The notes under the pieces were generated by a model that saw only the letters and a list, made by a program, of their open reading frames with translations, searched no databases and was not told the origin of the DNA. A program made the position numbers and the translations under genes. Shown here piece by piece: positions 3,227-59,381 of a stretch of DNA of 64,000 nucleotides (position 1 is the first letter of the stretch; the number at the start of each line of letters is the position of its first letter). The stretch is from the NCBI GenBank assembly GCA_047495785.1, contig JBLDXI010000007.1, positions 4,154,001-4,218,000 on the forward strand, in the 5' to 3' direction. This DNA is from Lepidodermella squamata (taxonomy: Eukaryota > Animalia > Gastrotricha).

Positions 3227-3449
3227 AGATTCGGAAACGCTCTTTTTAACCTAACGATTTCTTTGGCGTGTCGACGCTAACAAGGTCATTTCGATGCATC
3301 CATAATATAACCAATAAATATAGTAGTAAATGATGCGAACAATTAGTTTGGAGATTACAACCTTTGAGCTGTCCTGCTTGTTGAACCTGATTCAGTGTTG
3401 TCGCTGAACTTCACGTAACCTTGATTAAGTTCTTCTGAGTTTTCTTACA

Positions 3450-3624
3450 TCGTTAACGGCGCGCCTAAACAACCACTTAGACTCATTCGATCGTACTTTC
3501 AGTCGCCTAACGTATTGGTGAAGTACGTTAGGCTTATTGAGCACCAATTTTTTCATCTATCGAACGTACTTTCCATATAAAATCTATAAATAGTGAAGTG
3601 GTTGTTTCGGCGCGTCGCTAACGA
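3450..3624. mobile_element. MITE with ~29-bp imperfect TIRs starting TCGTTA(A/G)CG
   Basis: 3450-3478 is an imperfect reverse complement of 3596-3624; CA dinucleotide on both flanks. Confidence 0.6.
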
Positions 3625-3822
3625 CATGTCCCAATCTGCGACTATCGCCATTTTTCCGATTACAAAGCATTAGAGTTGAATCATCGGAACTATTTATATG
3701 AATAGAGTATCAGTCCGTTTTTGTTTGCTATCCAAATTAGCTCATGCAGTTCCTCGATAAATGGCTCGTTACTCATTACCATAGAGAGGTGGTCTTATCA
3801 GCATTACAGTTCTGTATTCTGT

Positions 3823-49560: not shown

Positions 49561-51921
49561 GGATGAAATCTGGGGAGATAATTTGTCAAATTGTAATGAA
49601 TTATAGATTGCCATTAATTATTCCAATCATTTAGTTTTCGTTTCGATAGGATTACTAGTTACTGGTGTGATTTGCTATAATTTCTATTTGCCCCTTGGCA
49701 GAACCAAAAAGATGTCTTGATCCAGGAGAATTTTTGTTTTTGTATTATTGTTCATTTTTAGCTGATAACAGGCACGCGATCGGGTTCACTTTTCAATGCT
49801 CGCATCATGCCACCGCCAACACAGTATCACGGACTCAATGACCGTATCATTCGAATATTTTTTTCACAAAATATTTCAATTTTATTAACGTGTTAAGCAT
49901 GCCCTATTGATGAAAAAGTGGATTGTAGTTTTGGCTTCTCCCGTCAATCTTTACCGCCTTCCGTCTTCAAAAATTCTTCTTCTTCTCGCCCGATCACAAA
50001 ACTCGACTCTCAGCTTTCGATTTTGTGCTGCAAGCAGGTGGAAGTGGAATGAATTTGTGGATTTAATTATCAGTCTAGGACGTGTTACAGGCCGAGTCAA
50101 TTCGCGACACGATGTAGGCCTGGCATTCCCGGTTGCAGAAAAGACGAAATGCAGGTATTAACATCGACATTTGTTTCCCTGAAATGTACACGCGTTGAAA
50201 TTTGGCTTTAAACGGGCATCTCTTTGTCAGTTTTGGCAAAAAATCAATTAAAATTACAAGTTATGTGATTGCGAAGCTTTGTTGTATGGTTTGATTGGAT
50301 TGTTCAGGTTGGCCCGTCTTTCAACGGCGCGTATCCACTGCGGTCAAATATGGCTTCATGCCAGGCTTATGAATCAAATTTCACGGTAAAATTGTTTTCT
50401 ACCCTGAACTCATTGAAAAGCTATTAATTTGAATATTTTGAAGAACCAACCTTTCGACGCGTGTAACATGGGCGCTCCTGACGGCCCGCTTTACAGGTGC
50501 CTTCCCAGTGGCTCGACCTGCTCCGGCGACAATGTGGTACGTTATTCACAGTTCACATTCAAAGTTTGAACTGATTTGTTTATTATCAGTTCCCAGGCCA
50601 GACGAATTTCAAAAACATCGACGCATGCCTGTTAAGTGGAGCACGTGAGTCATTATCATTTTCTCAATATATATATCGCGACATAATGCTTAATGCTTGT
50701 TTTCCGCAGGTTCCAGCCAAGAGATAGATCTAGTTCGTTACATTAGAAAGCCGTACAAGCGTTGCTTTAACGCGACCGATCGTTCGTTCTACGGGTGCCG
50801 TCCGGAGAGTCTTGGCTGCGTGGCAGGCGAAACTGACGAGTTCTCGCCTAAAGCGTACCGGACGAGAGAAAACTGCATGTTATGGGTGAGTGATGTTTTT
50901 ATATGCGACCACTGCGCTTGCAAAGCCTTGCCGTATACGTACGTTTTCAGAACGCTGTCCAGTGTGATACACCCACCGGCAGGAAGTGCTACAACCTGTG
51001 CCCTACTGGAGCCACACGTGTAAGATAAAATATATAGCTCCATTGTAGCGGATTGTAGCTCCATTGATGTCTGGAAATTAGGTCAAAGTCTTCGCAAAGG
51101 CAGCAACGTTTGACAAAAATTACGCAATGTGCTTGCTGGATATTGCCGCACAGGCCTCGAACAGTTCTTACTTCCTTTCTCCCGTCGCCTACAATAGCGG
51201 CCCATTCCGCAACCACCTAGACGCGTGTGCGGCCAACGGCAGCCGGCTCGCCACACTCCGCACGCCGGCCGACATGGCTGCGGCGAGACTCGTGCTCGCC
51301 GATTCCGGCGAAACATTCGTTTTCATTGGCCTGACCGGCACGTTCCGTTGGCAGGATGACAACTCCTCCTTCAGCATTTCGTCGCCGTTTTGGACTCCAA
51401 CCGGCCCAGCTAGTCATGGCTCGTGTGAGTAATACGTGGGTTAGGTATATTGCGTTGAGCCTGACCGAGAGTTACCAAATAAGGCAGTTTCTATTTTCAA
51501 TTTGCTGTTTTATTTCGATTTTACGCAGGTCTGAGAATGACGCCACCTGGCATTATTGATTGGCCGTGCTCTCTTTCAAATGACTTTGTGGTTTGCGTCG
51601 CCAGCGTGAGCTTCAATGTGTTCAAACTGAACGTGTTATACTTGACAGTTTTTTATTTGCCGCTTTTAGAACAACGTCTCAGATTACGAGGTGGTCACAG
51701 GAAATGCGGATTGGCTAGCAGCGTCAAACCTGTGCCAGGCCAAGGGCAAGACGCTGCCGGCTGTTAGAAACAAAGATTCGTACGACTTTCTGAATAACCT
51801 GGCGGTAGCGCGCTCTGGTAAAGCGTTCTGGCTCAATGGAAAGCGAACCGAGATTGATGAGAAAACATGGATCAATGGTGCAGCCTATGACAGCTCGCTG
51901 TTCACCATCGCCGGTTACGCC

Positions 51922-54900
51922 CATGAGACGTACCAGGACGCAGCGCTTCGATCAACACGCCATTTTGTTGTGTTATTTTTTAATGAGGTCCAAAGGTCAC
52001 TGCAAGAAAAAAACAGCCTCATTAACTTTTTTGCCTCAATCGTCATAGCAACGCGTGCGGCGACGCATGGAAGAAAAAAACAACTACAAACACCGAAATT
52101 TATTACTTGGAAATCGCACATAAAACATCATGACTAATTAGACATTGCACGAAAATACTACATATTACGTATAATATTTCATATCTACACTTCATTATTA
52201 TACGGCCAGGATTAATATAGGTATAACAACAGCTCCGAACGACTGGATAAAAATATAGAACGATATTTGCAAAGATTTTAAGAGGCTTAATACTGACATT
52301 TCAGGCGAATAAAATCAGCCACGTAGTTAATTATATTCACAATTTCATAGTAAATAATCACAGCCGGTGAAAATAATTGCCGATGGGCATTAGATAGATA
52401 TAGGACGGATGTATTGAGCCAAAAAAATATGAACCCAGATAGCGCGTATTTAACAATATCGTCGCAAGACGTGATTTTATATTCATAAAATTTGGCGACA
52501 GAAAGTGGGCACAACAACAATTTGTAAAGCACAACAAAGTGTGTTTGGAAAATAATTTCCAACTTAATAATTCGCAAAATCAGTTTTTAATAAAGCAACA
52601 TAGCAATATAGCAACAAAAATTAATAGAGTATCACCGTACTATGTAGACACCATGTAAGCATTGAAATATAAGGCAATGTTGAAATAGAGGGCCTAACCG
52701 AAATAGAGGATAGGTGCCTTTTAGCATCAACCATAAGATGGCTTATGCAATATGGAAAGACACCAAAGACCAAAGTGGAGAATTTCGTAATTTTACCGAC
52801 AAATAAAAAAAATGGAGTAAGGATATGACTGATGATCTATCATCCACTAGAAAACTGGAACCAATATTATTAAAGGAGCAATTTTCATCCCGGGTTTCAA
52901 CTGCGTTTCCTAGAAATGAATTCTAAAGTAGAGCCGGAATATAAAGCATTCCAATCAATTAACGGAGAGGTTAACGGTCGTTTGGATGATATAGAAGACT
53001 TGATACATTACAGGACTGTTAAATTTCCATATCAATCTTTGCCAAGTTTTTTAAGGCTAGCTCTAAAAGCAACGGACGAACCTGCGCCCTTGTCACGAAA
53101 AAAACGAATTGTTCGACGTGCAATCATAAATTGAGCCCGTTGCAGTACAGGAAAGACGATGGACCGGTCGGTCAGATTTTGCAGGGTGGCATTCATTTTA
53201 GTAACGACAGGCTGCAGAGCCTTGTTATTGACCAAGTCCGCATGAAATTCAGGCGTGAAGCATAGCTTTAATATCGCGAGGACATCCGCATTAGGCTGCG
53301 TTGCCCTTCCTCGAGATCGTAGCTCGACGTAGTCGCTGTGAGCCTCAGGGCTAGGCGTCAGCTTCAGCTTACGAGTCACAAAACCGGCACACCATTCAAT
53401 TGCAAAATTGTCAATTTTCAAATTACCAGGCAGGTAAACCCGATGAATGCCGGCTTCTTTCGCCCTAGCCAGTGACTGCTTTTTAAGAAGGCGAGCAACT
53501 TTGATAGGGATTCCAGTAGATCGTCCACGGACCTTGACATTTCCGCCGCGGCTGCATCCGAAATAGCCGCCGCCGAAGCGTAATTTTCCAGCTCGGCGCT
53601 GAATAGCTGTAAAATTAGGGTTTGACTTTGAGGAATTACCGTCGCGGCGAAACTGGTTGAACAGAATCTCGTTATGATCCTGATTTGCGCGCGACGGAAC
53701 AAATGATTTGGCCCCATTGGACAGCGAGGCTCGTACCAAATTGACGAAATTGATCGAAGTTTCGATTAACCCTCGGTTGGCCTGCCAGGACAGTGAGGTT
53801 TTCTCCGATTTGTTTTCTTCGTTTATTTTACTTATTAGCGGAACAAAAGCACGAATTAGCCATACCAGGCGCTTGTCGTTGGGATCGGTATACGGAGCGA
53901 CGTTGGGCTTGATTAGATTCTCAGGCACGACTTCCTGGTTGCCATTCAGGCAGTCGAACCAGACGTCCATGAGAAGCAAGAAGAAGGCAGTCGCTTGCGC
54001 ATCAATGTTGTCCGGGTGCATCAGCAAAATTTCGATGGCGACGGATCGCGATAATACCTGAGCAGCATAGGCCACATTCATTTTTTGAGGAGCATTTTTA
54101 CCCTTGACAGTAAACACGTGATGGGCAGTAAGCCGAGTGGAACGCTGCATGAACCGATTCCGATCACGCAAATACAGTTCTTCCACAAATTCCCACATAA
54201 CACGACCCTTACCAAAGCGAGGAAACAAATTGAGGAGATTCAATTCAAATATCGCCGAGAAAGCATCCCAGTCCACGGTTTCAAAGTCGAGGGTAACCTG
54301 AAATAATGATGAGGAATTAATACAACGGGCTAATGGCAAAATTCATATCGGCAGTGATATCGGAAAGAGCAGCTGCTTAAAGACGAGGCATTACTTGTTT
54401 GAGGGTAATTAGAGCTCGATCCTGCATTACTTGATCCGGTTCATTGTCTCCTTCGGCTTTATCTCCTATATTATTATACCTTACCTGTTGATCCTGAGGA
54501 AATGTGAAAAGAAGAGCATAGATGTTAAGGAAAAGACAGTTTTGGCTAGTCTGACGTAATTAAACGTTTCGTCTCGGCCAAGAGACTCATCAGAGACCTT
54601 TTAAACTGTAAACTCGTTAGTAAATCTATAGCTAGATATTATGGCTTTGTTAGTAACTAAACACTCGCGAACTATAACAATTTTCTGAAATATTAGCAAT
54701 GAAACCCTAAAATTAAGCTATTATTTCATTAGATTTCGGGCGATTATTTTCTAGAGATATAACATAAAAGAGATGATAGAAAAATATTATGCACTATTAA
54801 TCAGCAGATATGCTTACCTTCTTGTGGATAATCGCATTTCTCGTGATTTTCAAAACGTGAGGAGGGTCAAACAGCAGATGGACGACTTCATCCGTGCAGG

Positions 54901-57441
54901 GATGTCTCAGGCCTTCCGGTCCAAATTGTTCACAAAGCATGTTATACATGGACCAATTTTCACCGGCACCGTCCCATGTAGCCGCCGTGACAGTTATCGG
55001 AGTTTCAAGCTCATAGAGCCGCTTGATCGAATTTTTCAGAAACTTCGCCACGAAGGATACTGGCATATCGACCATCGGAAAGTTGGCAATATTGACCACC
55101 ATTTTATCTTCGACAAATTTGAGGCAAAATGAAAGGCATTGCTTTGCTGGTTCGCCGGGCTGATCGAGTGCCATTCCTACAATGGTATTACTCTTATCGA
55201 TGATCTGCATGCCCGATGACATGGCCATAGCATCGAGAGACAACATTCCATATTTAAAACGCCAGGGTTCGTTTGAATTTTTGATTGTCAACGATAACAT
55301 CTCTAGGCAAGAATCAGAAATCCCAGGGCTGTAATCGATAGGAATAAGGCGGACAAGAGTAGATGGATGTGGTAGCATTAACATTGCTGAATCACGGACG
55401 AATTCGTACGCCTTCGCGCTAATTGAATGGAGCATGATTGCCATGTTCATTACAAGCTCGCCGGCTTTACCGACATAGCGAATGGCGTGAACAGATTCGA
55501 CTTTCCTCTGATGATGCTGAGTCTGCATAAATATTTCCAGCTCCTCCTTGGTGATGTGAGCATGAGGTGCGTGAATCACTTTAGGCGGTAGGTCAGCATC
55601 GACACCGATAGATTTGAAACGCCGAGATGATTTTTTTGCAAGCACTTCACGTCTAAGAGCGTTTAATGCTGTCTCGTAATAGTTGGCAGATCTAGCTAAG
55701 CGCCGATTTTCATCTTGCAGCTTGGCGATGATCTTTTTAGCCGACATGCACTTGATACAGTTGGCTTTCTGTCCGCACTGTAAGTGAGCCGAATAACATG
55801 CTGACGTCAGAGACGCGACATCCGGTGCCTTGCCACGCTTAACTCCAGTTTCCTCAGTCCGAGCCGGATGGGTCTGCGATGATGCCGGGACATTTTGAAC
55901 ACTTCTTGTCACCTGTTCCGATTGTTCAAACGACTGCTTTCGGCTGGGTTGCGACTGATTTCCAAGGTTGCGCATATTGACTTGTTTTCGAACAGTGCTT
56001 CGATTGGAATATGTCTCGGGGACATGTAGCAATTCGGGAGCAGCAGCGGGGGTGACGACGGGAGTTAGCAAAACAGGAATCTTTGCGACAGATAAAGCCC
56101 GTTTTTTATTTGCCGGTTGGCCAGTGAAGCAAGACGCAGGTAGAGGATCTGAATAGGCAATAATCATTAGGTACTCATTACTAATTAAATGTGGGAAAAG
56201 TAATTACTGGAGTACTCATTCTTCCCTCGCCGTCTTTCCTCAGCGGATGTACATGCTGTTTCTGACACCCAGGGCCGTTTGGTAGCTGGCTGCGCGATTG
56301 CAGTAGAAGTAACACGTAGTGTAAAAACTCGTGGACCTCGCGGAGGTGTCTGCTGACTATCCTCGGGTCCCGGCTGCCGTTCAACCTATCATAATTCAAC
56401 AGATTCGATGCCGAAATAGCATCAAAGACAATCTCTTACGTCTCCACATTGAAGTAGCAACAGTCTCTGATAAGCAGCCGTTTCATCCCTGAACACAAGT
56501 AAGAAATATGATCACCATATGAAAAAATCATTAAGGTTGCTCGCTAAACATACCTCCTAGAACACACTCTGTTTCGAAAATCATAATGACGATCCGATAA
56601 TTCCTTATAAACTACCGCGAGTTTAACACTCTGTGAAGTAAGCCGAGCCGCAGGCTTCGCAGGCGAACCATGGCTCAAATCAATTAGCTGGCTTATTAGG
56701 AGCGTATAGGCTATAAGAAATCGCCGGCGGCGTTTCTTCGATACAAACCAAACCAAGCCCCGAATAAAATGCATGGGGAGCAGCTGAGCAGTAGCGAAAT
56801 AAGAAATTAGCATAGACATTAGGCATCCAAGTAGGATCACTGCTGAAAACATTGAGAAATTCATCACCACAGGCAAGATGCACTCTGCCAACCAGGAGAT
56901 CTAGGATGTGAATTGAATTCGATGTACATATCGATATAACAGCTTCTCAGATTACCCCAATACATAGCGTTGACATCATGGCAGATGTTTCATTTGATCC
57001 GTAGCCGATCATCATGAACATGATCCATACGGACCAGTACAGCTTGTTAAGTAACATGGTCTCTAAATGAATCAACTGAAACCCTGTCAATTAAACAATA
57101 CATAATTGTAAGATGACTAATCAATGTATAAAAGAGTACAAACCTACACCGAAGAGCACTTGTCACCTGCCACCTGATACCAAATGATCAAAGTCTTGTA
57201 GGCTTCAAGACTCTTGTACAAGACTTTACACGGCCTCTGCGGTTTTTCAGTAGAAATAATCTGTTTTTACGTTGTCACTGTATTTTTTAACTTGACGATG
57301 GCAAATTAATTTTATATTCTAATAAAAATTTGCCATCGAAAGTCATTATTATGCACACTAATCATAAACACGTCACGTGATTTTTTACGCAACCTCGGAT
57401 AACGGGAGCTTCGAAGCCGCTGCGTCCTGGTACGTCTCATG
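51922..57441 (-). mobile_element. Full-length P-superfamily DNA transposon, 5520 bp
   Basis: TIR CATGAGACGTACCAGGACGCAGCG(G)CTTCGA (24 bp perfect, ~30-31 bp with one indel); perfect 8-bp TSD GTTACGCC at 51914-51921 and 57442-57449. Confidence 0.96.
53032..57057 (-). CDS. P-element polyprotein: hydrophobic N-terminal protein, 2A-like motif, transposase (exons 57057-56956, 56900-56554, 56488-56440, 56385-56208, 56148-54818, optional 54493-54485, 54297-53032)
   Basis: Transposase motifs AYEFVR...LPHPSTL, LSLDAM, WDGAGEN, FDPPHVLK..RN, KMNV..AAQVLS, FDCLN, NQDHNE.LF. The upstream exons join in frame through 54-65 bp GT-AG introns. The transposase call is very secure; the 5' exon model is less so. 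Confidence 0.8.
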
Positions 57442-57683
57442 GTTACGCCGTGTTCAGCCCATCTGAGTACTGTAAGTTCAACATTGAAAACAGGAGTCAG
57501 GAGGTAATTGTACATATTCCGCTTCAGGTTACTTGCTGACCGCTAACCAGGTTCAACAGGTTTCGTGTGCTTTCGGTGTCGCTGGCTTGTGCGAAAAAAT
57601 TTGACGAGATTTATTTGTCCGCGCTTCGACCTGACTTCATTCAAAAACCGCAGCTTTTGACGTCAGCTTAGTTACGATCAATA

Positions 57684-58533
57684 CACCTTTTTTCCTTTGC
57701 AATTTCATTATTTTTATTAAAGAAACACGCGTTTATTTTTCATGATTATCAGCGTATTCATTTTATTCATTTTCTTACTTTTTTCTACCTAAGAATTTAC
57801 TCGATCTTCGAAGTTCGCTGTATGCGAATACGAAACCCGAATAGGATGAACTATATATCAAATTGAAGCTAGATATATAATCTTTTCAAATATGCGATCA
57901 GATCGGCAAAATCATTATTTGTTTCGCAGAAACTAAGCAGTAAGTAGAATGAACTGCAAAGATGTTTTCCTTGGATAGCTTTTATATTTTATAGGTATAA
58001 GGACCCTCCCTCCTCCCCAAAAATGATTAGAACAATCAGGCGAAGGTGATATCTCGAGTAGAAGCGATAGAACCTCAAAAAATTTGGCTTTAGTAGCATT
58101 TTGGGCAATAGCTTACGCGGGTGCTGAGGTAGTTTTCACAAATATTGCTTTGGTTTCATCATGAAATGATGAAATTAGCGAAGACTAAGTAATAGAATAG
58201 TTCCTTAGCAGTTATTTGTTGAAAAATAAACATAATTTTAGGTAAAATCAGAAGAAACTTTCCGAACAACCAGTCGGCTAAAACGTTGAATACCTTCAAG
58301 AACAAAATCGCATCCAGTATTTTAATATCACAGCTAGATAGATCAGATCTCTAGCTTCAATTTGATATATAGTTCATCCTATTCGGGTTTCGTATTCGCA
58401 TACAGCGAACTTCGAAGATCGAGTAAATTCTTAGGTAGAAAAAAGTAAGAAAATGAATGAAATGAATACGCTGATGAAAAATAAACGCGTGTTTCTTTAA
58501 TAAAAATAATAAAATTGCAAAGGAAAAAAGGTG
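57684..58533. mobile_element. Non-autonomous DNA transposon with ~190-bp TIRs and TA flanks
   Basis: 57684-~57873 is a near-perfect reverse complement of ~58350-58533; TA|CACC...GGTG|TA. Confidence 0.88.
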
Positions 58534-59381
58534 TATGTAGTCAATCCAAAGCTATAGCATTATTTACTCTGTCATGCTCGAGTAATAAAACCGCAGTGAT
58601 CATTGGATGCCCTGGTTCTTTCGGTTGGATGCCATGCAAGGCAAGAATTTCAAAGACATGCTTATCAATGCATCCACCAATAGTGTGCCAGCCTAAGTTA
58701 CCAGCCTAAACTCACCTGTAAATACTGGCTTGCCGTGACCTCATTTTGGGACATTACTGACTGACAATTTTTGCAGATGTAGGACGTCTGTTAAAGACCA
58801 TCTGCATAAATTCTTTCAGAAATCGGACTTGACGTCTTTGAGCTATCAAAAGTAATATAAATACCTCAATGTTTGGCCAAATTGCCCCAAGTGCCCATTT
58901 CACCCCAACGACGGTAGTCAGCGCCAGAAATGGATTACGTGGTGTCGAATATCGATTAGTCACCTCTCATCTTCCCCACCTCCTCGAATTTACTTATAAG
59001 GAAGCATTTATCACACGCCGATCGTGCGATTTCTCTATGAGACGGGCAATTAATTATTAGGCTTAGGAAAGCCTCAGAATCTTACAAATGGAGTGTGTTC
59101 GAAGCTTCAATAATACCTATCGCTCGATCACGTTCTCGTGTTAATTATCTTTAGCGGAGATGATTACGTGGAGTTGCCAGCAATGACATTATTTCGCAGA
59201 TGTCGTGAAACCGAGAAAGCCAATTTCGATTAACATGGTAAACTTGAATAAAACAACTTTAGAACACGCTAAGCCGACATTGTTTTCAGTGGTCATGTTC
59301 CCGTAAACCGTTAGCTTCTAAATCGCTTCATTTATCATTAATTTACCACTCACATACTCTTTCTCAGATCTTCAATTTGAA

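What the first reader, a model, noticed from the sequence alone, without database searches (positions are those of the whole stretch)
56208..57057. P-element transposase preceded by a membrane protein and an intron-split 2A-like (StopGo) motif
Seen: four small 5' exons splice in frame onto the transposase. They encode ~170 aa with 2-3 hydrophobic segments followed by KKRRRR, then QRLLLLQCGD|VERQPGP. This motif exists only after a 54-bp GT-AG intron (56439-56386) is removed, so it is invisible in the ORF track. Known: 2A peptides have the consensus LLxxxGD(V/I)ExNPG/P, cause ribosomal skipping, and occur in viruses, some non-LTR retrotransposons and invertebrate genes. P transposases normally begin with a THAP zinc finger, and no canonical C2CH THAP is visible here. 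Inference: one mRNA yields a small membrane protein plus a free transposase. The N-to-Q change may make skipping partial, leaving some transposase tethered to membrane as a regulatory mechanism, or the membrane product may have its own selfish function. I do not know of this architecture in a cut-and-paste DNA transposon.
Basis: partly seen in the sequence, partly recalled or inferred. Interest (0 to 1): 0.9.

Follow-up and report, generated by a model that had tools for sequence, protein, structure and literature searches.

The report
P transposon with membrane-leader 2A module
An intact cut-and-paste (P-type) DNA transposon starts its transposase gene with a small membrane protein and an intron-split 2A "ribosome-skipping" motif; four to five related transposon lineages in the same genome keep this layout, which I could not find reported for any DNA transposon.

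Summary
On the minus strand, six GT-AG exons (57057-53035) join in frame to give 1090 aa: a hydrophobic leader, KKRRRR, then YQRLLLLQCGD|VERQPGP. That motif exists only after removal of the 54-nt intron 56439-56386. A P-type transposase follows, with the DDE residues present and no THAP domain.

The gene lies in a complete 5520-bp P element (51922-57441). It has perfect 24-bp CATG inverted repeats and an 8-bp target duplication. About 130 copies of the end sequence, mostly ~415-bp MITEs, occur elsewhere in the genome.

The main evidence is comparative. Eight other P copies in the same genome, at 58-71% protein identity, keep a membrane leader and a 2A motif. In all nine copies a phase-0 intron splits the motif at the same GD|(V/I) point. 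Their motifs read VERNPGP, VESNPGP, VQSNPGP and IQLNPGP. The 2A 18-mer is 63% identical between lineages, against 20-30% for its flanks, although synonymous sites are saturated.

The module is therefore real and under selection. StopGo itself is untested, because no RNA runs exist. The window copy's N-to-Q change hits a residue that published mutagenesis finds essential, so this copy probably skips weakly or not at all.

I found no paper reporting a natural 2A in a DNA transposon. I rate it a new variant of a known kind.

The parts
51922..57441 (-). Complete P-superfamily DNA transposon, 5520 bp, with its gene on the minus strand
   Evidence: Bounded by perfect inverted repeats and an 8-bp direct duplication. 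Single copy at the DNA level in the genome.
51914..51921 (.). Target-site duplication GTTACGCC, left copy
   Evidence: Read directly from the sequence. Identical to 57442-57449.
57442..57449 (.). Target-site duplication GTTACGCC, right copy
   Evidence: Read directly from the sequence.
51922..51945 (+). Terminal inverted repeat CATGAGACGTACCAGGACGCAGCG, at the 3' end relative to the gene
   Evidence: the repeat finder pair I3, 100% complementary. The 24-mer occurs 133 times in the genome against 0 for the control.
57418..57441 (-). Terminal inverted repeat, at the 5' end relative to the gene
56956..57057 (-). Putative exon 1: MLLNKLYWSVWIMFMMIGYGSNETSAMMSTLCIG. If it is not spliced, it is instead a 36-codon upstream ORF.
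   Evidence: Joins in frame via GGG|gtaatc ... tcctag|ATC, intron 55 nt. No RNA support. The closest paralog shows no equivalent exon.
56554..56900 (-). Exon 2, the main leader exon. It holds the alternative start ATG at 56864, a strong hydrophobic helix at 56858-56802, KKRRRR at 56738-56721, and the FLIAYTLLISQL segment.
   Evidence: Open frame. Kyte-Doolittle peak of 2.13 over 19 residues. Homologous to the leader of the paralog on contig C4 (E 3.4e-7). No Pfam family.
56440..56488 (-). Exon 3, a 49-nt mini-exon encoding DETAAYQRLLLLQCGD, the N-terminal part of the 2A motif
   Evidence: An equivalent mini-exon ending in GD|gt is present in all eight paralogous copies.
56386..56439 (-). Phase-0 GT-AG intron, 54 nt, splitting the 2A motif between GD and VE. 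If retained, it terminates the frame after 5 codons.
   Evidence: All nine copies have an intron at this position, 53-64 nt long.
56208..56385 (-). Exon 4. It begins VERQPGP (56385-56365). The predicted StopGo point is Gly|Pro at codons 172|173 of the long model.
   Evidence: Paralogs have an equivalent exon of 166-202 nt, always ending in phase 1 with a strong donor.
54818..56148 (-). Exon 5: a low-complexity N-terminal region, a Cys cluster with a coiled-coil-like stretch, the P-type HTH, and the first part of the RNase H domain. Catalytic Asp residues are at 55234-55232 (LSLDAM) and 54973-54971 (TWDGAGENW).
   Evidence: Pfam PF12017 (1.2e-6) and PF21787 (3.8e-9). A profile of this region hits Drosophila P transposase 6p5a (E 4e-6), aligning with D230 and D303.
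54298..54817 (-). Intron of 520 nt, enlarged by a nested high-copy repeat at about 54540-54601
   Evidence: GT-AG and in frame. Paralog L019 has a 54-nt intron at the same place. Read depth reaches 577 there against 42 around it.
53032..54297 (-). Exon 6: the GTP-binding insertion domain and the C-terminal part of the RNase H domain, with catalytic Glu at 53670-53668 (NQDHNE). The stop codon is at 53034-53032.
   Evidence: Pfam PF21788 (6.1e-12). The NQDxNE motif lines up with NQDIVE(531) of 6p5a, but only in a weak local alignment. The residue is invariant in alignment A2.

Best explanation
The window holds an intact, recently inserted, autonomous P-superfamily DNA transposon. Its gene was built by adding a three-exon 5' module to a THAP-less P transposase. 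The module encodes a small membrane protein of about 126-172 aa: one strong and one or two weaker hydrophobic helices, a poly-basic cluster, and a second hydrophobic LLxxxLL segment. It ends in a class-A, Leu-rich 2A/StopGo peptide whose coding sequence is assembled only by splicing.

In the ancestral and canonical form (...LLLL(R/Q)(S/C)GD|V-E-x-NPGP), I infer the following. The ribosome releases the leader after the Gly and carries on from the Pro. One mRNA then gives a free membrane leader and a free 918-aa transposase with an N-terminal proline. Any read-through product is a transposase anchored to the ER membrane and kept away from the DNA. The efficiency of the motif would set the ratio of active to tethered enzyme, or simply the amount of enzyme made.

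The lineages carry efficiency-lowering Gln substitutions: E14Q, whose distribution across lineages needs at least two changes, and N16Q in the window copy. The window copy is therefore most likely an attenuated or StopGo-dead version.

What is shown: the element boundaries, the gene structure, conservation of the module, the motif and the intron position, and the presence of the catalytic residues.

What is inferred: splicing in vivo, skipping, membrane insertion, and any regulatory role.
For: 1. The element is complete. It has a perfect 24-bp CATG inverted repeat, an 8-bp target duplication and an uninterrupted 1090-codon spliced frame.

2. P-type domains are present, and the first two catalytic Asp residues align to 6p5a D230 and D303. 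The Glu motif is also present.

3. The family has been mobile. The end sequence occurs 133 times against 0 for the control, many as ~415-bp pairs. These share about 100 bp of one subterminal region and 146-190 bp of the other, at 78-92% identity.

4. All nine copies in 4-5 lineages have the leader, a mini-exon ending in GD|gt, a 53-64 nt phase-0 intron, and an exon starting (V/I)(E/Q)x(N/Q)PGP. The next exon has a conserved length of 166-202 nt and always ends in phase 1.

5. Leaders are open and hydrophobic in every lineage, with a shared pattern of basic cluster followed by LLxxxLL.

6. Synonymous sites between lineages are saturated (dS above 2 or undefined). Even so, the 2A 18-mer is 63% identical on average, against 20-30% for the leader and 29-33% for the 50 aa that follow it.

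7. In the tree, the five 2A-bearing lineages form a clade, with the 2A-less relative P0001 outside it. The window copy is sister to a canonical NPGP copy (99/98 support), so Q is the derived state.

8. The motif fits published rules for activity: (A/S/C)G before D12, and a Leu-rich helix at positions -14 to -11 (PMC12846837; PMC13405545).

9. E14Q retains 26-56% activity in the FMDV 2A context (PMC12846837; PMC3326317).

10. There is a functional precedent for an N-terminal hydrophobic signal combined with 2A giving dual targeting: the sea-urchin NLR 2A-like signal sequences (PMC4981915).
Against: - There is no transcript, junction or protein evidence of any kind. No RNA run holds the locus.
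- The window copy has Q at N16. N16A abolishes StopGo, and no N16 substitution passed the threshold in a deep mutational scan.
- Three of the five lineages deviate at 'invariant' core positions. This could also mean the motif is not used for skipping.
- Upstream signal sequences can inhibit 2A function in artificial polyproteins (de Felipe 2010, seen only as a reference).
- No relative from another species carries the module. The single outside relative found lacks it.
- Membrane insertion rests on a hydropathy calculation alone.
- Whether exon 1 is used is unknown.
Confidence: 0.6

Rival explanations
1. The module is real, but in this copy the 2A is dead. The gene makes only a leader-transposase fusion anchored in the ER membrane. 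The element would then be crippled, or self-repressed, or dependent on rare events such as internal initiation or proteolysis after the basic cluster. The ~60 MITEs would have been mobilised earlier or by a sibling transposase.
For: N16 is mechanistically essential, N16A abolishes activity, and no N16 substitution passed the deep-scan threshold. The element is single copy. The MITEs are only 78-92% identical to its subterminal regions, so they are not fresh derivatives of it. N to Q needs two nucleotide changes, which suggests time spent without the canonical residue.
Against: The 1090-codon frame, all splice sites, both inverted repeats and the catalytic residues are intact, which is not expected of a long-dead copy. 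Q keeps the amide group of N. N16H is modestly active in some contexts. N16Q in this particular sequence context has never been tested.
Confidence: 0.3
2. The conserved peptide acts mainly as a translation throttle, a Leu-rich 'stall helix'. It would lower the amount of protein made from the mRNA, by ribosome stalling and quality control, rather than separate two products. This would limit the transposase dose.
For: Eukaryotic 2A-like peptides with 3-6 leucines at positions -19 to -10, especially -13L and -14L, mostly fall in 'reduction' classes. These classes are enriched in transposable-element proteins (PMC13405545). The P copies have LLLL or LLL at -14 to -11. The core substitutions seen here would matter less for a stalling role.
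Against: That work is a preprint using a mammalian reporter. It does not explain why a membrane leader of about 110-170 aa is conserved upstream. The canonical NPGP core is kept in two lineages and PGP in all.
Confidence: 0.15
3. The 5' exons are not part of the transposase mRNA. They would be a separate small gene or untranslated leader, and the in-frame joins and the motif would be coincidental.
For: No RNA evidence exists. The leader has no known family.
Against: The same in-frame three-exon arrangement and the same motif split at the same codon boundary recur in nine copies, across lineages with saturated synonymous divergence. The split pattern has 0 hits in the reversed control. No Met starts the transposase frame near exon 4 or the start of exon 5.
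Confidence: 0.04

Closest known systems
N-terminal '2A-like signal sequences' of Strongylocentrotus purpuratus NLR proteins (Roulston et al. 2016, PMC4981915)
   Same: A hydrophobic, ER-targeting N-terminal segment is followed directly by a Leu-rich ...SGD(V/I)ExNPGP motif ahead of a large cytosolic or nuclear protein. That work showed that skipping efficiency partitions the product between a free cytosolic form and a form routed into the secretory pathway. The authors also suggested that point mutations could tune the ratio.
   Different: There the whole element is a 26-aa signal peptide on a host immune gene. Here the leader is a 110-170 aa protein with probably several membrane-spanning helices and a poly-basic cluster, the payload is a DNA transposase, and the motif is split by an intron. 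Nothing here has been tested functionally.
2A-like sequences at the N-terminus of ORF2 (rarely ORF1) of APE-type non-LTR retrotransposons (Heras 2006; Odon et al. 2013, PMC3708506)
   Same: A selfish element places a 2A near the N-terminus of its enzyme. Copies show core substitutions, including the same ES-to-QL change noted for Nematostella CR1-20, with graded or lost activity. This genome also has such elements: GDIE(M/T/S)NPGP in ORFs carrying reverse-transcriptase or endonuclease-plus-reverse-transcriptase domains.
   Different: Those are retrotransposons with unsplit motifs. This is a class II cut-and-paste element with inverted repeats, a target duplication and introns. None of the papers or surveys I searched mentions a transposase.
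Drosophila P element transposase and the THAP9 family (structure 6p5a)
   Same: An 8-bp target duplication, inverted repeats beginning CATG, the HTH domain, an RNase H fold split by a GTP-binding insertion domain, D230/D303/E531 equivalents, a multi-exon gene, and non-autonomous deletion derivatives.
   Different: No THAP zinc finger. An extra leader-2A module of about 130-170 aa. Only about 28-30% identity to other database P transposases.
Viral class-A 2A peptides
   Same: The Leu-rich helix, (S/C)G, then D-V-E-x-N-P-G-P layout. My recollection, not checked with a tool here, is that T2A reads ...LLTCGDVEENPGP, which would resemble the window's ...LLLLQCGDVERQPGP.
   Different: A cellular or transposon context, an intron inside the motif, and Q in place of the invariant N in this copy.

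Membership tests
P-superfamily DNA transposon | 8-bp target-site duplication flanking the element | tested here: met
   GTTACGCC at 51914-51921 and at 57442-57449.
P-superfamily DNA transposon | Terminal inverted repeats | tested here: met
   24 of 24 bases complementary, CATGAGACGTACCAGGACGCAGCG. Sister lineages have related CATGAGACGTAGCTAGGACGCCG... ends.
P-superfamily DNA transposon | Transposase with the P-type HTH and an RNase H domain split by a GTP-binding insertion domain | tested here: met
   PF12017, PF21787 and PF21788, all above their gathering scores.
P-superfamily DNA transposon | Catalytic D, D, E triad | tested here: met
   Both Asp residues align to D230 and D303 of 6p5a (profile E 4e-6). 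The Glu lies in NQDHNE opposite NQDIVE531, but only in a weak local alignment. All three are invariant among the paralogs.
P-superfamily DNA transposon | N-terminal THAP (C2CH) DNA-binding domain | tested here: not met
   No THAP hit at E <= 0.01 in the translations that were scanned: the exon 1, exon 2, exon 5 and exon 6 ORFs (the mini-exon 3 and exon 4 were not scanned). None in the paralogs either, or in two distant P families of this genome. THAP is typical of the family but not universal, so the element still belongs to the superfamily by its catalytic core and its ends.
P-superfamily DNA transposon | Evidence of mobility (non-autonomous derivatives) | tested here: met
   133 end-sequence matches against 0 for the control. 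Pairs of ~415 bp share subterminal sequence with the element.
Class-A 2A / StopGo peptide | Core D12-(V/I)13-E14-x15-N16-P17-G18-P19 | tested here: not met
   The window copy reads D-V-E-R-Q-P-G-P, with Q at position 16. The core is fully met in paralogs L017/L040 (DVERNPGP) and L019 (DVESNPGP). L018/L022 and L020/L021/L041 carry E14Q.
Class-A 2A / StopGo peptide | G at p11 preceded by A/S/C, and a Leu-rich helix upstream | tested here: met
   LLLLQ-CG-D in the window and LLLLR-SG-D in paralogs. The rule is taken from PMC12846837 and PMC13405545.
Class-A 2A / StopGo peptide | The open reading frame continues through the motif into a downstream protein | tested here: met
   918 codons follow the Gly|Pro point without a stop.
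Class-A 2A / StopGo peptide | Two separate translation products from one ORF | not testable with these tools
   This needs a translation or reporter assay. Published data predict low or no activity for a substitution at N16.
Dual-targeting '2A-like signal sequence' (sea-urchin NLR type) | Hydrophobic ER-targeting segment N-terminal to the 2A, near the protein's N-terminus | tested here: inconclusive
   Kyte-Doolittle peaks of 1.85-2.9 in the four full-length leaders; the 5'-truncated L019 leader has none above 1.6. No signal-peptide or topology predictor was available. The hydrophobic segments lie 60-130 aa upstream of the 2A rather than inside it.
Dual-targeting '2A-like signal sequence' (sea-urchin NLR type) | Partition of the product between membrane/secretory and cytosolic pools | not testable with these tools
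   This requires a localisation experiment.

The most novel reading that the evidence does not exclude
The membrane leader plus 2A, together with its own intron at GD|(V/I)E, may be a portable 5' cassette that different selfish elements in this genome have acquired. The P DNA transposons carry it. So does an unrelated low-copy ORF family (loci L038 and L039), one member of which lies next to an endonuclease/reverse-transcriptase ORF. The cassette would send the element's mRNA to the ER and set the ratio of free to membrane-tethered enzyme. Attenuating Gln substitutions (E14Q, needing at least two changes across lineages, and N16Q once) would be selected as a built-in dose control. That would be a translational-recoding counterpart of the splicing-based repression of the Drosophila P element.
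Probability: 0.2. Interest if true: 0.85.

Novelty: new variant of a known kind. Interest (0 to 1): 0.72.

Why it matters
Natural 2A/StopGo elements are documented in RNA viruses, non-LTR retrotransposons and a few host gene families. The systematic surveys I could search list none in a transposase (PMC3708506, PMC12338488, PMC13405545, PMC12846837, 10.64898/2026.09.24.754024).

This clade of P elements would extend StopGo to class II transposons. It shows that the motif can be encoded across a splice junction, which makes it invisible to ORF- or genome-level motif scans, so surveys may be undercounting. It also offers a natural allelic series on one conserved scaffold: NPGP, E14Q and N16Q. 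That series allows a test of whether recoding efficiency tunes transposase dose or localisation.

The clade also raises a concrete question about why a DNA transposon would carry a membrane protein. The window copy is intact and has matching MITEs, so a donor/helper transposition assay can be designed directly.

Tried and rejected
- **RNA evidence.** The look-up of sequencing runs returned one run, not recorded as RNA. Read laying showed only collinear genomic contigs, with no joints and no variant at the Q codon. The splice junctions therefore remain predictions.
- **Relatives in other species.**
  - An HMMER scan of 1.84 billion cluster representatives gave one close hit (P0001, 50% identity) and otherwise only ~28-30% identical P transposases, none with NPGP.
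  - The word-indexed search gave the same single hit.
  - Its contig (L036) starts with a related end sequence but has no leader or 2A.
  - The metagenome scan with a profile found nothing.
  - Conservation across species is therefore untested. All comparative evidence comes from paralogs in this genome.
- **Leader identity.** No Pfam family and no usable ESM Atlas hit. I did not fold it, because only 4-5 very divergent sequences were available.
- **THAP domain.** None found.
- **Direct searches against solved structures.** Single-sequence searches were blank. Only profiles reached 6p5a.
- **dN/dS between lineages.** Not interpretable, because dS is saturated. I used retention of the frame and the identity contrast instead.
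- **The ORF after the split 2A in L039.** No Pfam hit, and Atlas hits were below a useful score.
- **N16Q activity data.** The Donnelly 2001 mutagenesis paper is not held, so no direct N16Q measurement could be cited.
- **Chance explanation.** Rejected on the control counts and the paralog conservation.
Full report
**1. What is in the sequence**

The region encodes a gene on the minus strand.
- 57057-56956
- 56900-56554
- 56488-56440
- 56385-56208
- 56148-54818
- 54297-53035

Intron lengths are 55, 65, 54, 59 and 520 nt. The product is 1090 aa with no stop.

The first ~170 aa are hydrophobic. The strongest helix is FSMFSAVILLGCLMSMLIS, with a Kyte-Doolittle score of 2.13. KKRRRR follows at 56738-56721, then a second hydrophobic stretch, FLIAYTLLISQL.

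A 49-nt mini-exon ends ...YQRLLLLQCGD, and the next exon begins VERQPGP. The 2A-like 18-mer therefore exists only in spliced RNA. Retaining the 54-nt intron (56439-56386) gives ...GDVRDCL-stop.

Pfam finds the P-type HTH (PF12017), TNP-like RNase H N-terminal domain (PF21787) and GTP-binding insertion domain (PF21788), all above their gathering scores. It finds no THAP domain. A profile of this clade reaches Drosophila P transposase 6p5a (E 4e-6), with LSLDAM aligned to D230 and TWDGAGENW to D303. NQDHNE lines up with NQDIVE531, though only weakly. All three residues are invariant among the paralogs.

**2. The gene sits in a complete transposon**

The repeat finder gave a perfect 24-bp inverted repeat at 51922-51945 and 57418-57441, reading CATGAGACGTACCAGGACGCAGCG. 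The 8 bp outside each end are identical: GTTACGCC. This is the P-element signature. The element spans 51922-57441, 5520 bp.

Its 5' kilobase is single copy in the 121-Mb assembly. The 24-mer end, in contrast, occurs 133 times, allowing up to 3 mismatches, against 0 for the reversed control. Many of these are inverted pairs about 415 bp apart. Those short elements share about 100 bp of one subterminal region and 146-190 bp of the other with the window element, at 78-92% identity. The window copy is thus the only full-length coding member found for a MITE-rich family.

The element interrupts an ORF with a C-type lectin domain (Pfam 1.6e-5). That frame continues beyond the right-hand duplication.

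**3. Comparative evidence**

A six-frame search of the same genome with the transposase core found paralogs at 58-71% identity on contigs C4, C66, C29, C25 and C46, plus fragments. The leader exon also matched upstream of the C4 copy (E 3.4e-7).

After fetching these loci, every one of eight further copies showed the same arrangement. A mini-exon ends in ...GD|gt, a 53-64 nt phase-0 intron follows, and the next exon starts with the rest of the motif:

| Copies | Motif |
|---|---|
| Window | ...RLLLLQCGD\|VERQPGP |
| L017, L040 | RLLLLRSGD\|VERNPGP |
| L019 | KATLLLRSGD\|VESNPGP |
| L018, L022 | KATLLLRSGD\|VQSNPGP |
| L020, L021, L041 | LLLLQCGD\|IQLNPGP |

Each lineage has an open, hydrophobic leader exon that splices in frame onto the mini-exon. 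The leaders share a basic cluster followed by LLxxxLL. The exon after the motif is 166-202 nt, always ends in phase 1 with a strong donor, and is followed by a 50-67 nt intron. Four lineages have related CATGAGACGTA... inverted repeats 4.4-5.8 kb apart.

Synonymous divergence between lineages is saturated, with dS above 2 or undefined. Yet the frames are intact, and the 2A 18-mer averages 63% pairwise identity. The leader averages 20-30% and the 50 residues after the motif 29-33%.

The split pattern AG|RTNSARNNNAAYCCNGGNCC has 11 genomic hits against 0 in the control, and 8 of them are these P copies.

A maximum-likelihood tree of the transposase core puts the five 2A-bearing lineages in one clade (82/90 support). 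The one outside relative, P0001, lies outside it. The window copy is sister to the canonical L017 (99/98 support). The module is therefore a shared derived feature of this clade, and Q at position 16 is derived in the window lineage. P0001's contig (L036) begins with a related end sequence, CATGTGACCTACCCAGGACGCAGAGC, but has no leader or 2A before its start codon.

**4. How it most likely works**

The peptide meets the published sequence rules for class-A StopGo apart from the core substitutions. It has a Leu-rich helix at positions -14 to -11, and (S/C)G before D12 (PMC12846837; PMC13405545).

In the canonical lineages I infer the following. The ribosome releases the leader after Gly and continues from Pro, giving a free membrane protein and a free transposase. 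Read-through product would be anchored by the leader. The basic cluster C-terminal to the strongest helix suggests that the downstream part faces the cytosol, but this is inference from hydropathy alone.

The closest experimental precedent is the sea-urchin NLR '2A-like signal sequence'. There, skipping efficiency partitions the product between cytosol and secretory pathway, and the authors suggested point mutations could tune the ratio (PMC4981915).

The substitutions seen here are all to Gln:
- **E14Q** occurs in two sets of copies. It retains 26-56% activity in the FMDV 2A context and was the only conserved-position change with relatively high activity in yeast. The tree does not say whether it arose twice or arose once and reverted.
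- **N16Q** occurs in the window copy. N16 hydrogen-bonds U4277 and stacks on U4198 in the PTC, N16A abolishes StopGo, N16H is only modestly active, and no N16 substitution reached the 0.6 threshold in a deep mutational scan of P2A and F2A.

I therefore rate StopGo as the ancestral function of the module at about 0.7. I rate appreciable skipping by the window copy at only about 0.3. The window copy is otherwise fully intact, so it is either a strongly attenuated autonomous element or a recently disabled one.

**5. Rivals**

- (a) The window copy makes only a tethered fusion.
- (b) The Leu-rich peptide is a 'reduction-class' stall helix that throttles output rather than separating products. A 2026 preprint reports this for many eukaryotic peptides, including transposable-element peptides with 3-6 leucines.
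- (c) The 5' exons are not part of the mRNA. Conservation of the whole exon structure makes this very unlikely.

No RNA data exist to test splicing. The one run that holds the locus is genomic DNA. It shows no variant at the Q codon.

**6. Comparison with what is known, and novelty**

2A-like peptides are known in non-LTR retrotransposons (PMC3708506). This genome has such elements too, with unsplit GDIE(M/T/S)NPGP in ORFs carrying reverse-transcriptase or endonuclease-plus-reverse-transcriptase domains. They are also known in NLR, RapGEF, ankyrin and death-domain proteins.

Full-text searches combining 2A, StopGo or NPGP with transposase or DNA transposon returned only biotechnology uses. None of the five survey or mechanism papers I opened mentions a transposase.

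The element is a member of the P superfamily by its ends, target duplication and catalytic core, although it lacks THAP. The window's peptide fails one defining residue of class-A 2A, while its paralogs pass. I classify the finding as a new variant of a known kind: StopGo-type recoding attached to a cut-and-paste transposase, with a membrane leader and an intron inside the motif.

**7. Limits**

- All comparative evidence is from one genome.
- The organism is not identified.
- Membrane insertion, splicing and skipping are all unverified.
- The spliced protein could not be used as a database query, because it has no reference.

Noticed in passing
window 54561-54602 (minus strand), inside the 520-nt transposase intron: A short repeat carrying a hammerhead-ribozyme core (CUGAUGAG...CGAAAC). 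The Rfam Hammerhead_3 score is 26.4 bits, below the gathering score of 48.5 (E 0.021). Read depth in the DNA run jumps from about 42 to 577 here, so it is a high-copy element, possibly related to retrozymes or Penelope-like elements.
   Followed up: partly
window 51691-51921 (+) and 57450 onward (+): The transposon is inserted in an exon of a C-type lectin-like gene (Pfam Lectin_C, 1.6e-5, on the left flank). The frame continues after the right-hand target duplication (VFSPSEYC, then a GTAAGT donor), so the host gene is disrupted in this assembly.
   Followed up: partly
L038 (G000:C9:3393278), L039 (G000:C28:109310), L037 (G000:C1:4939549): Three further intron-split 2A motifs lie outside the P elements: ...LFAVNLLQLCGD|IESNPGP, ...FIVIVFFNWLLLCGD|IEANPGP and ...YMPFLLLICGD|IESNPGP. 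Their introns are 51, 202 and 64 nt, and a hydrophobic stretch sits directly upstream. The ORFs after the motif in L038 (485 aa) and L039 (427 aa) are 32% identical, have no Pfam family, and belong to a low-copy family. L039 is followed about 480 nt downstream by an endonuclease/reverse-transcriptase ORF. The same intron position suggests a shared cassette.
   Followed up: partly
L042 (C2:1720945), L043 (C7:3991258), L044 (C33:2002418) and duplicates: Seven unsplit GDIE(M/T/S)NPGP motifs lie in the N-terminal regions of non-LTR retrotransposon ORFs. L042 and L043 show a reverse-transcriptase domain (L043 with C2H2 zinc fingers), and L044 shows endonuclease plus reverse transcriptase. This is the already-known retrotransposon context for 2A-like peptides.
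   Followed up: partly
G000, e.g. C18:268896-269312, C34:71963-72379, C38:827051-827469, C54:673902-674318: About 60 MITE-like elements of ~415 bp carry the window element's 24-bp ends, many with exact matches. A 4.35-kb pair at C31:1593062-1597410 has the same ends but no transposase match.
   Followed up: partly
window 57681-57883 and 58340-58536: A large near-perfect inverted repeat lies just outside the transposon. Its arms are 136 nt and 63 nt, 97-98% complementary, about 450-730 nt apart. It is probably another foldback or MITE-type element.
   Followed up: no
L036 (Logan contig SRR21620664_256111): This is the only close relative found outside this genome, at 50% identity. The contig starts exactly at a related P end sequence, CATGTGACCTACCCAGGACGCAGAGC. 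The gene starts MAYHWKNKCSF... at nt 694, with no leader or 2A. The source organism is unknown.
   Followed up: partly
L019 about 3300-3680: The leader of the C29 copy is truncated at its 5' end by an unrelated insertion: a GC-rich repeat ending in a poly-C run that is also found at L019:7784-7809. What remains could start at MKATLLLRSGD|VESNPGP, which would place the 2A at the extreme N-terminus.
   Followed up: no
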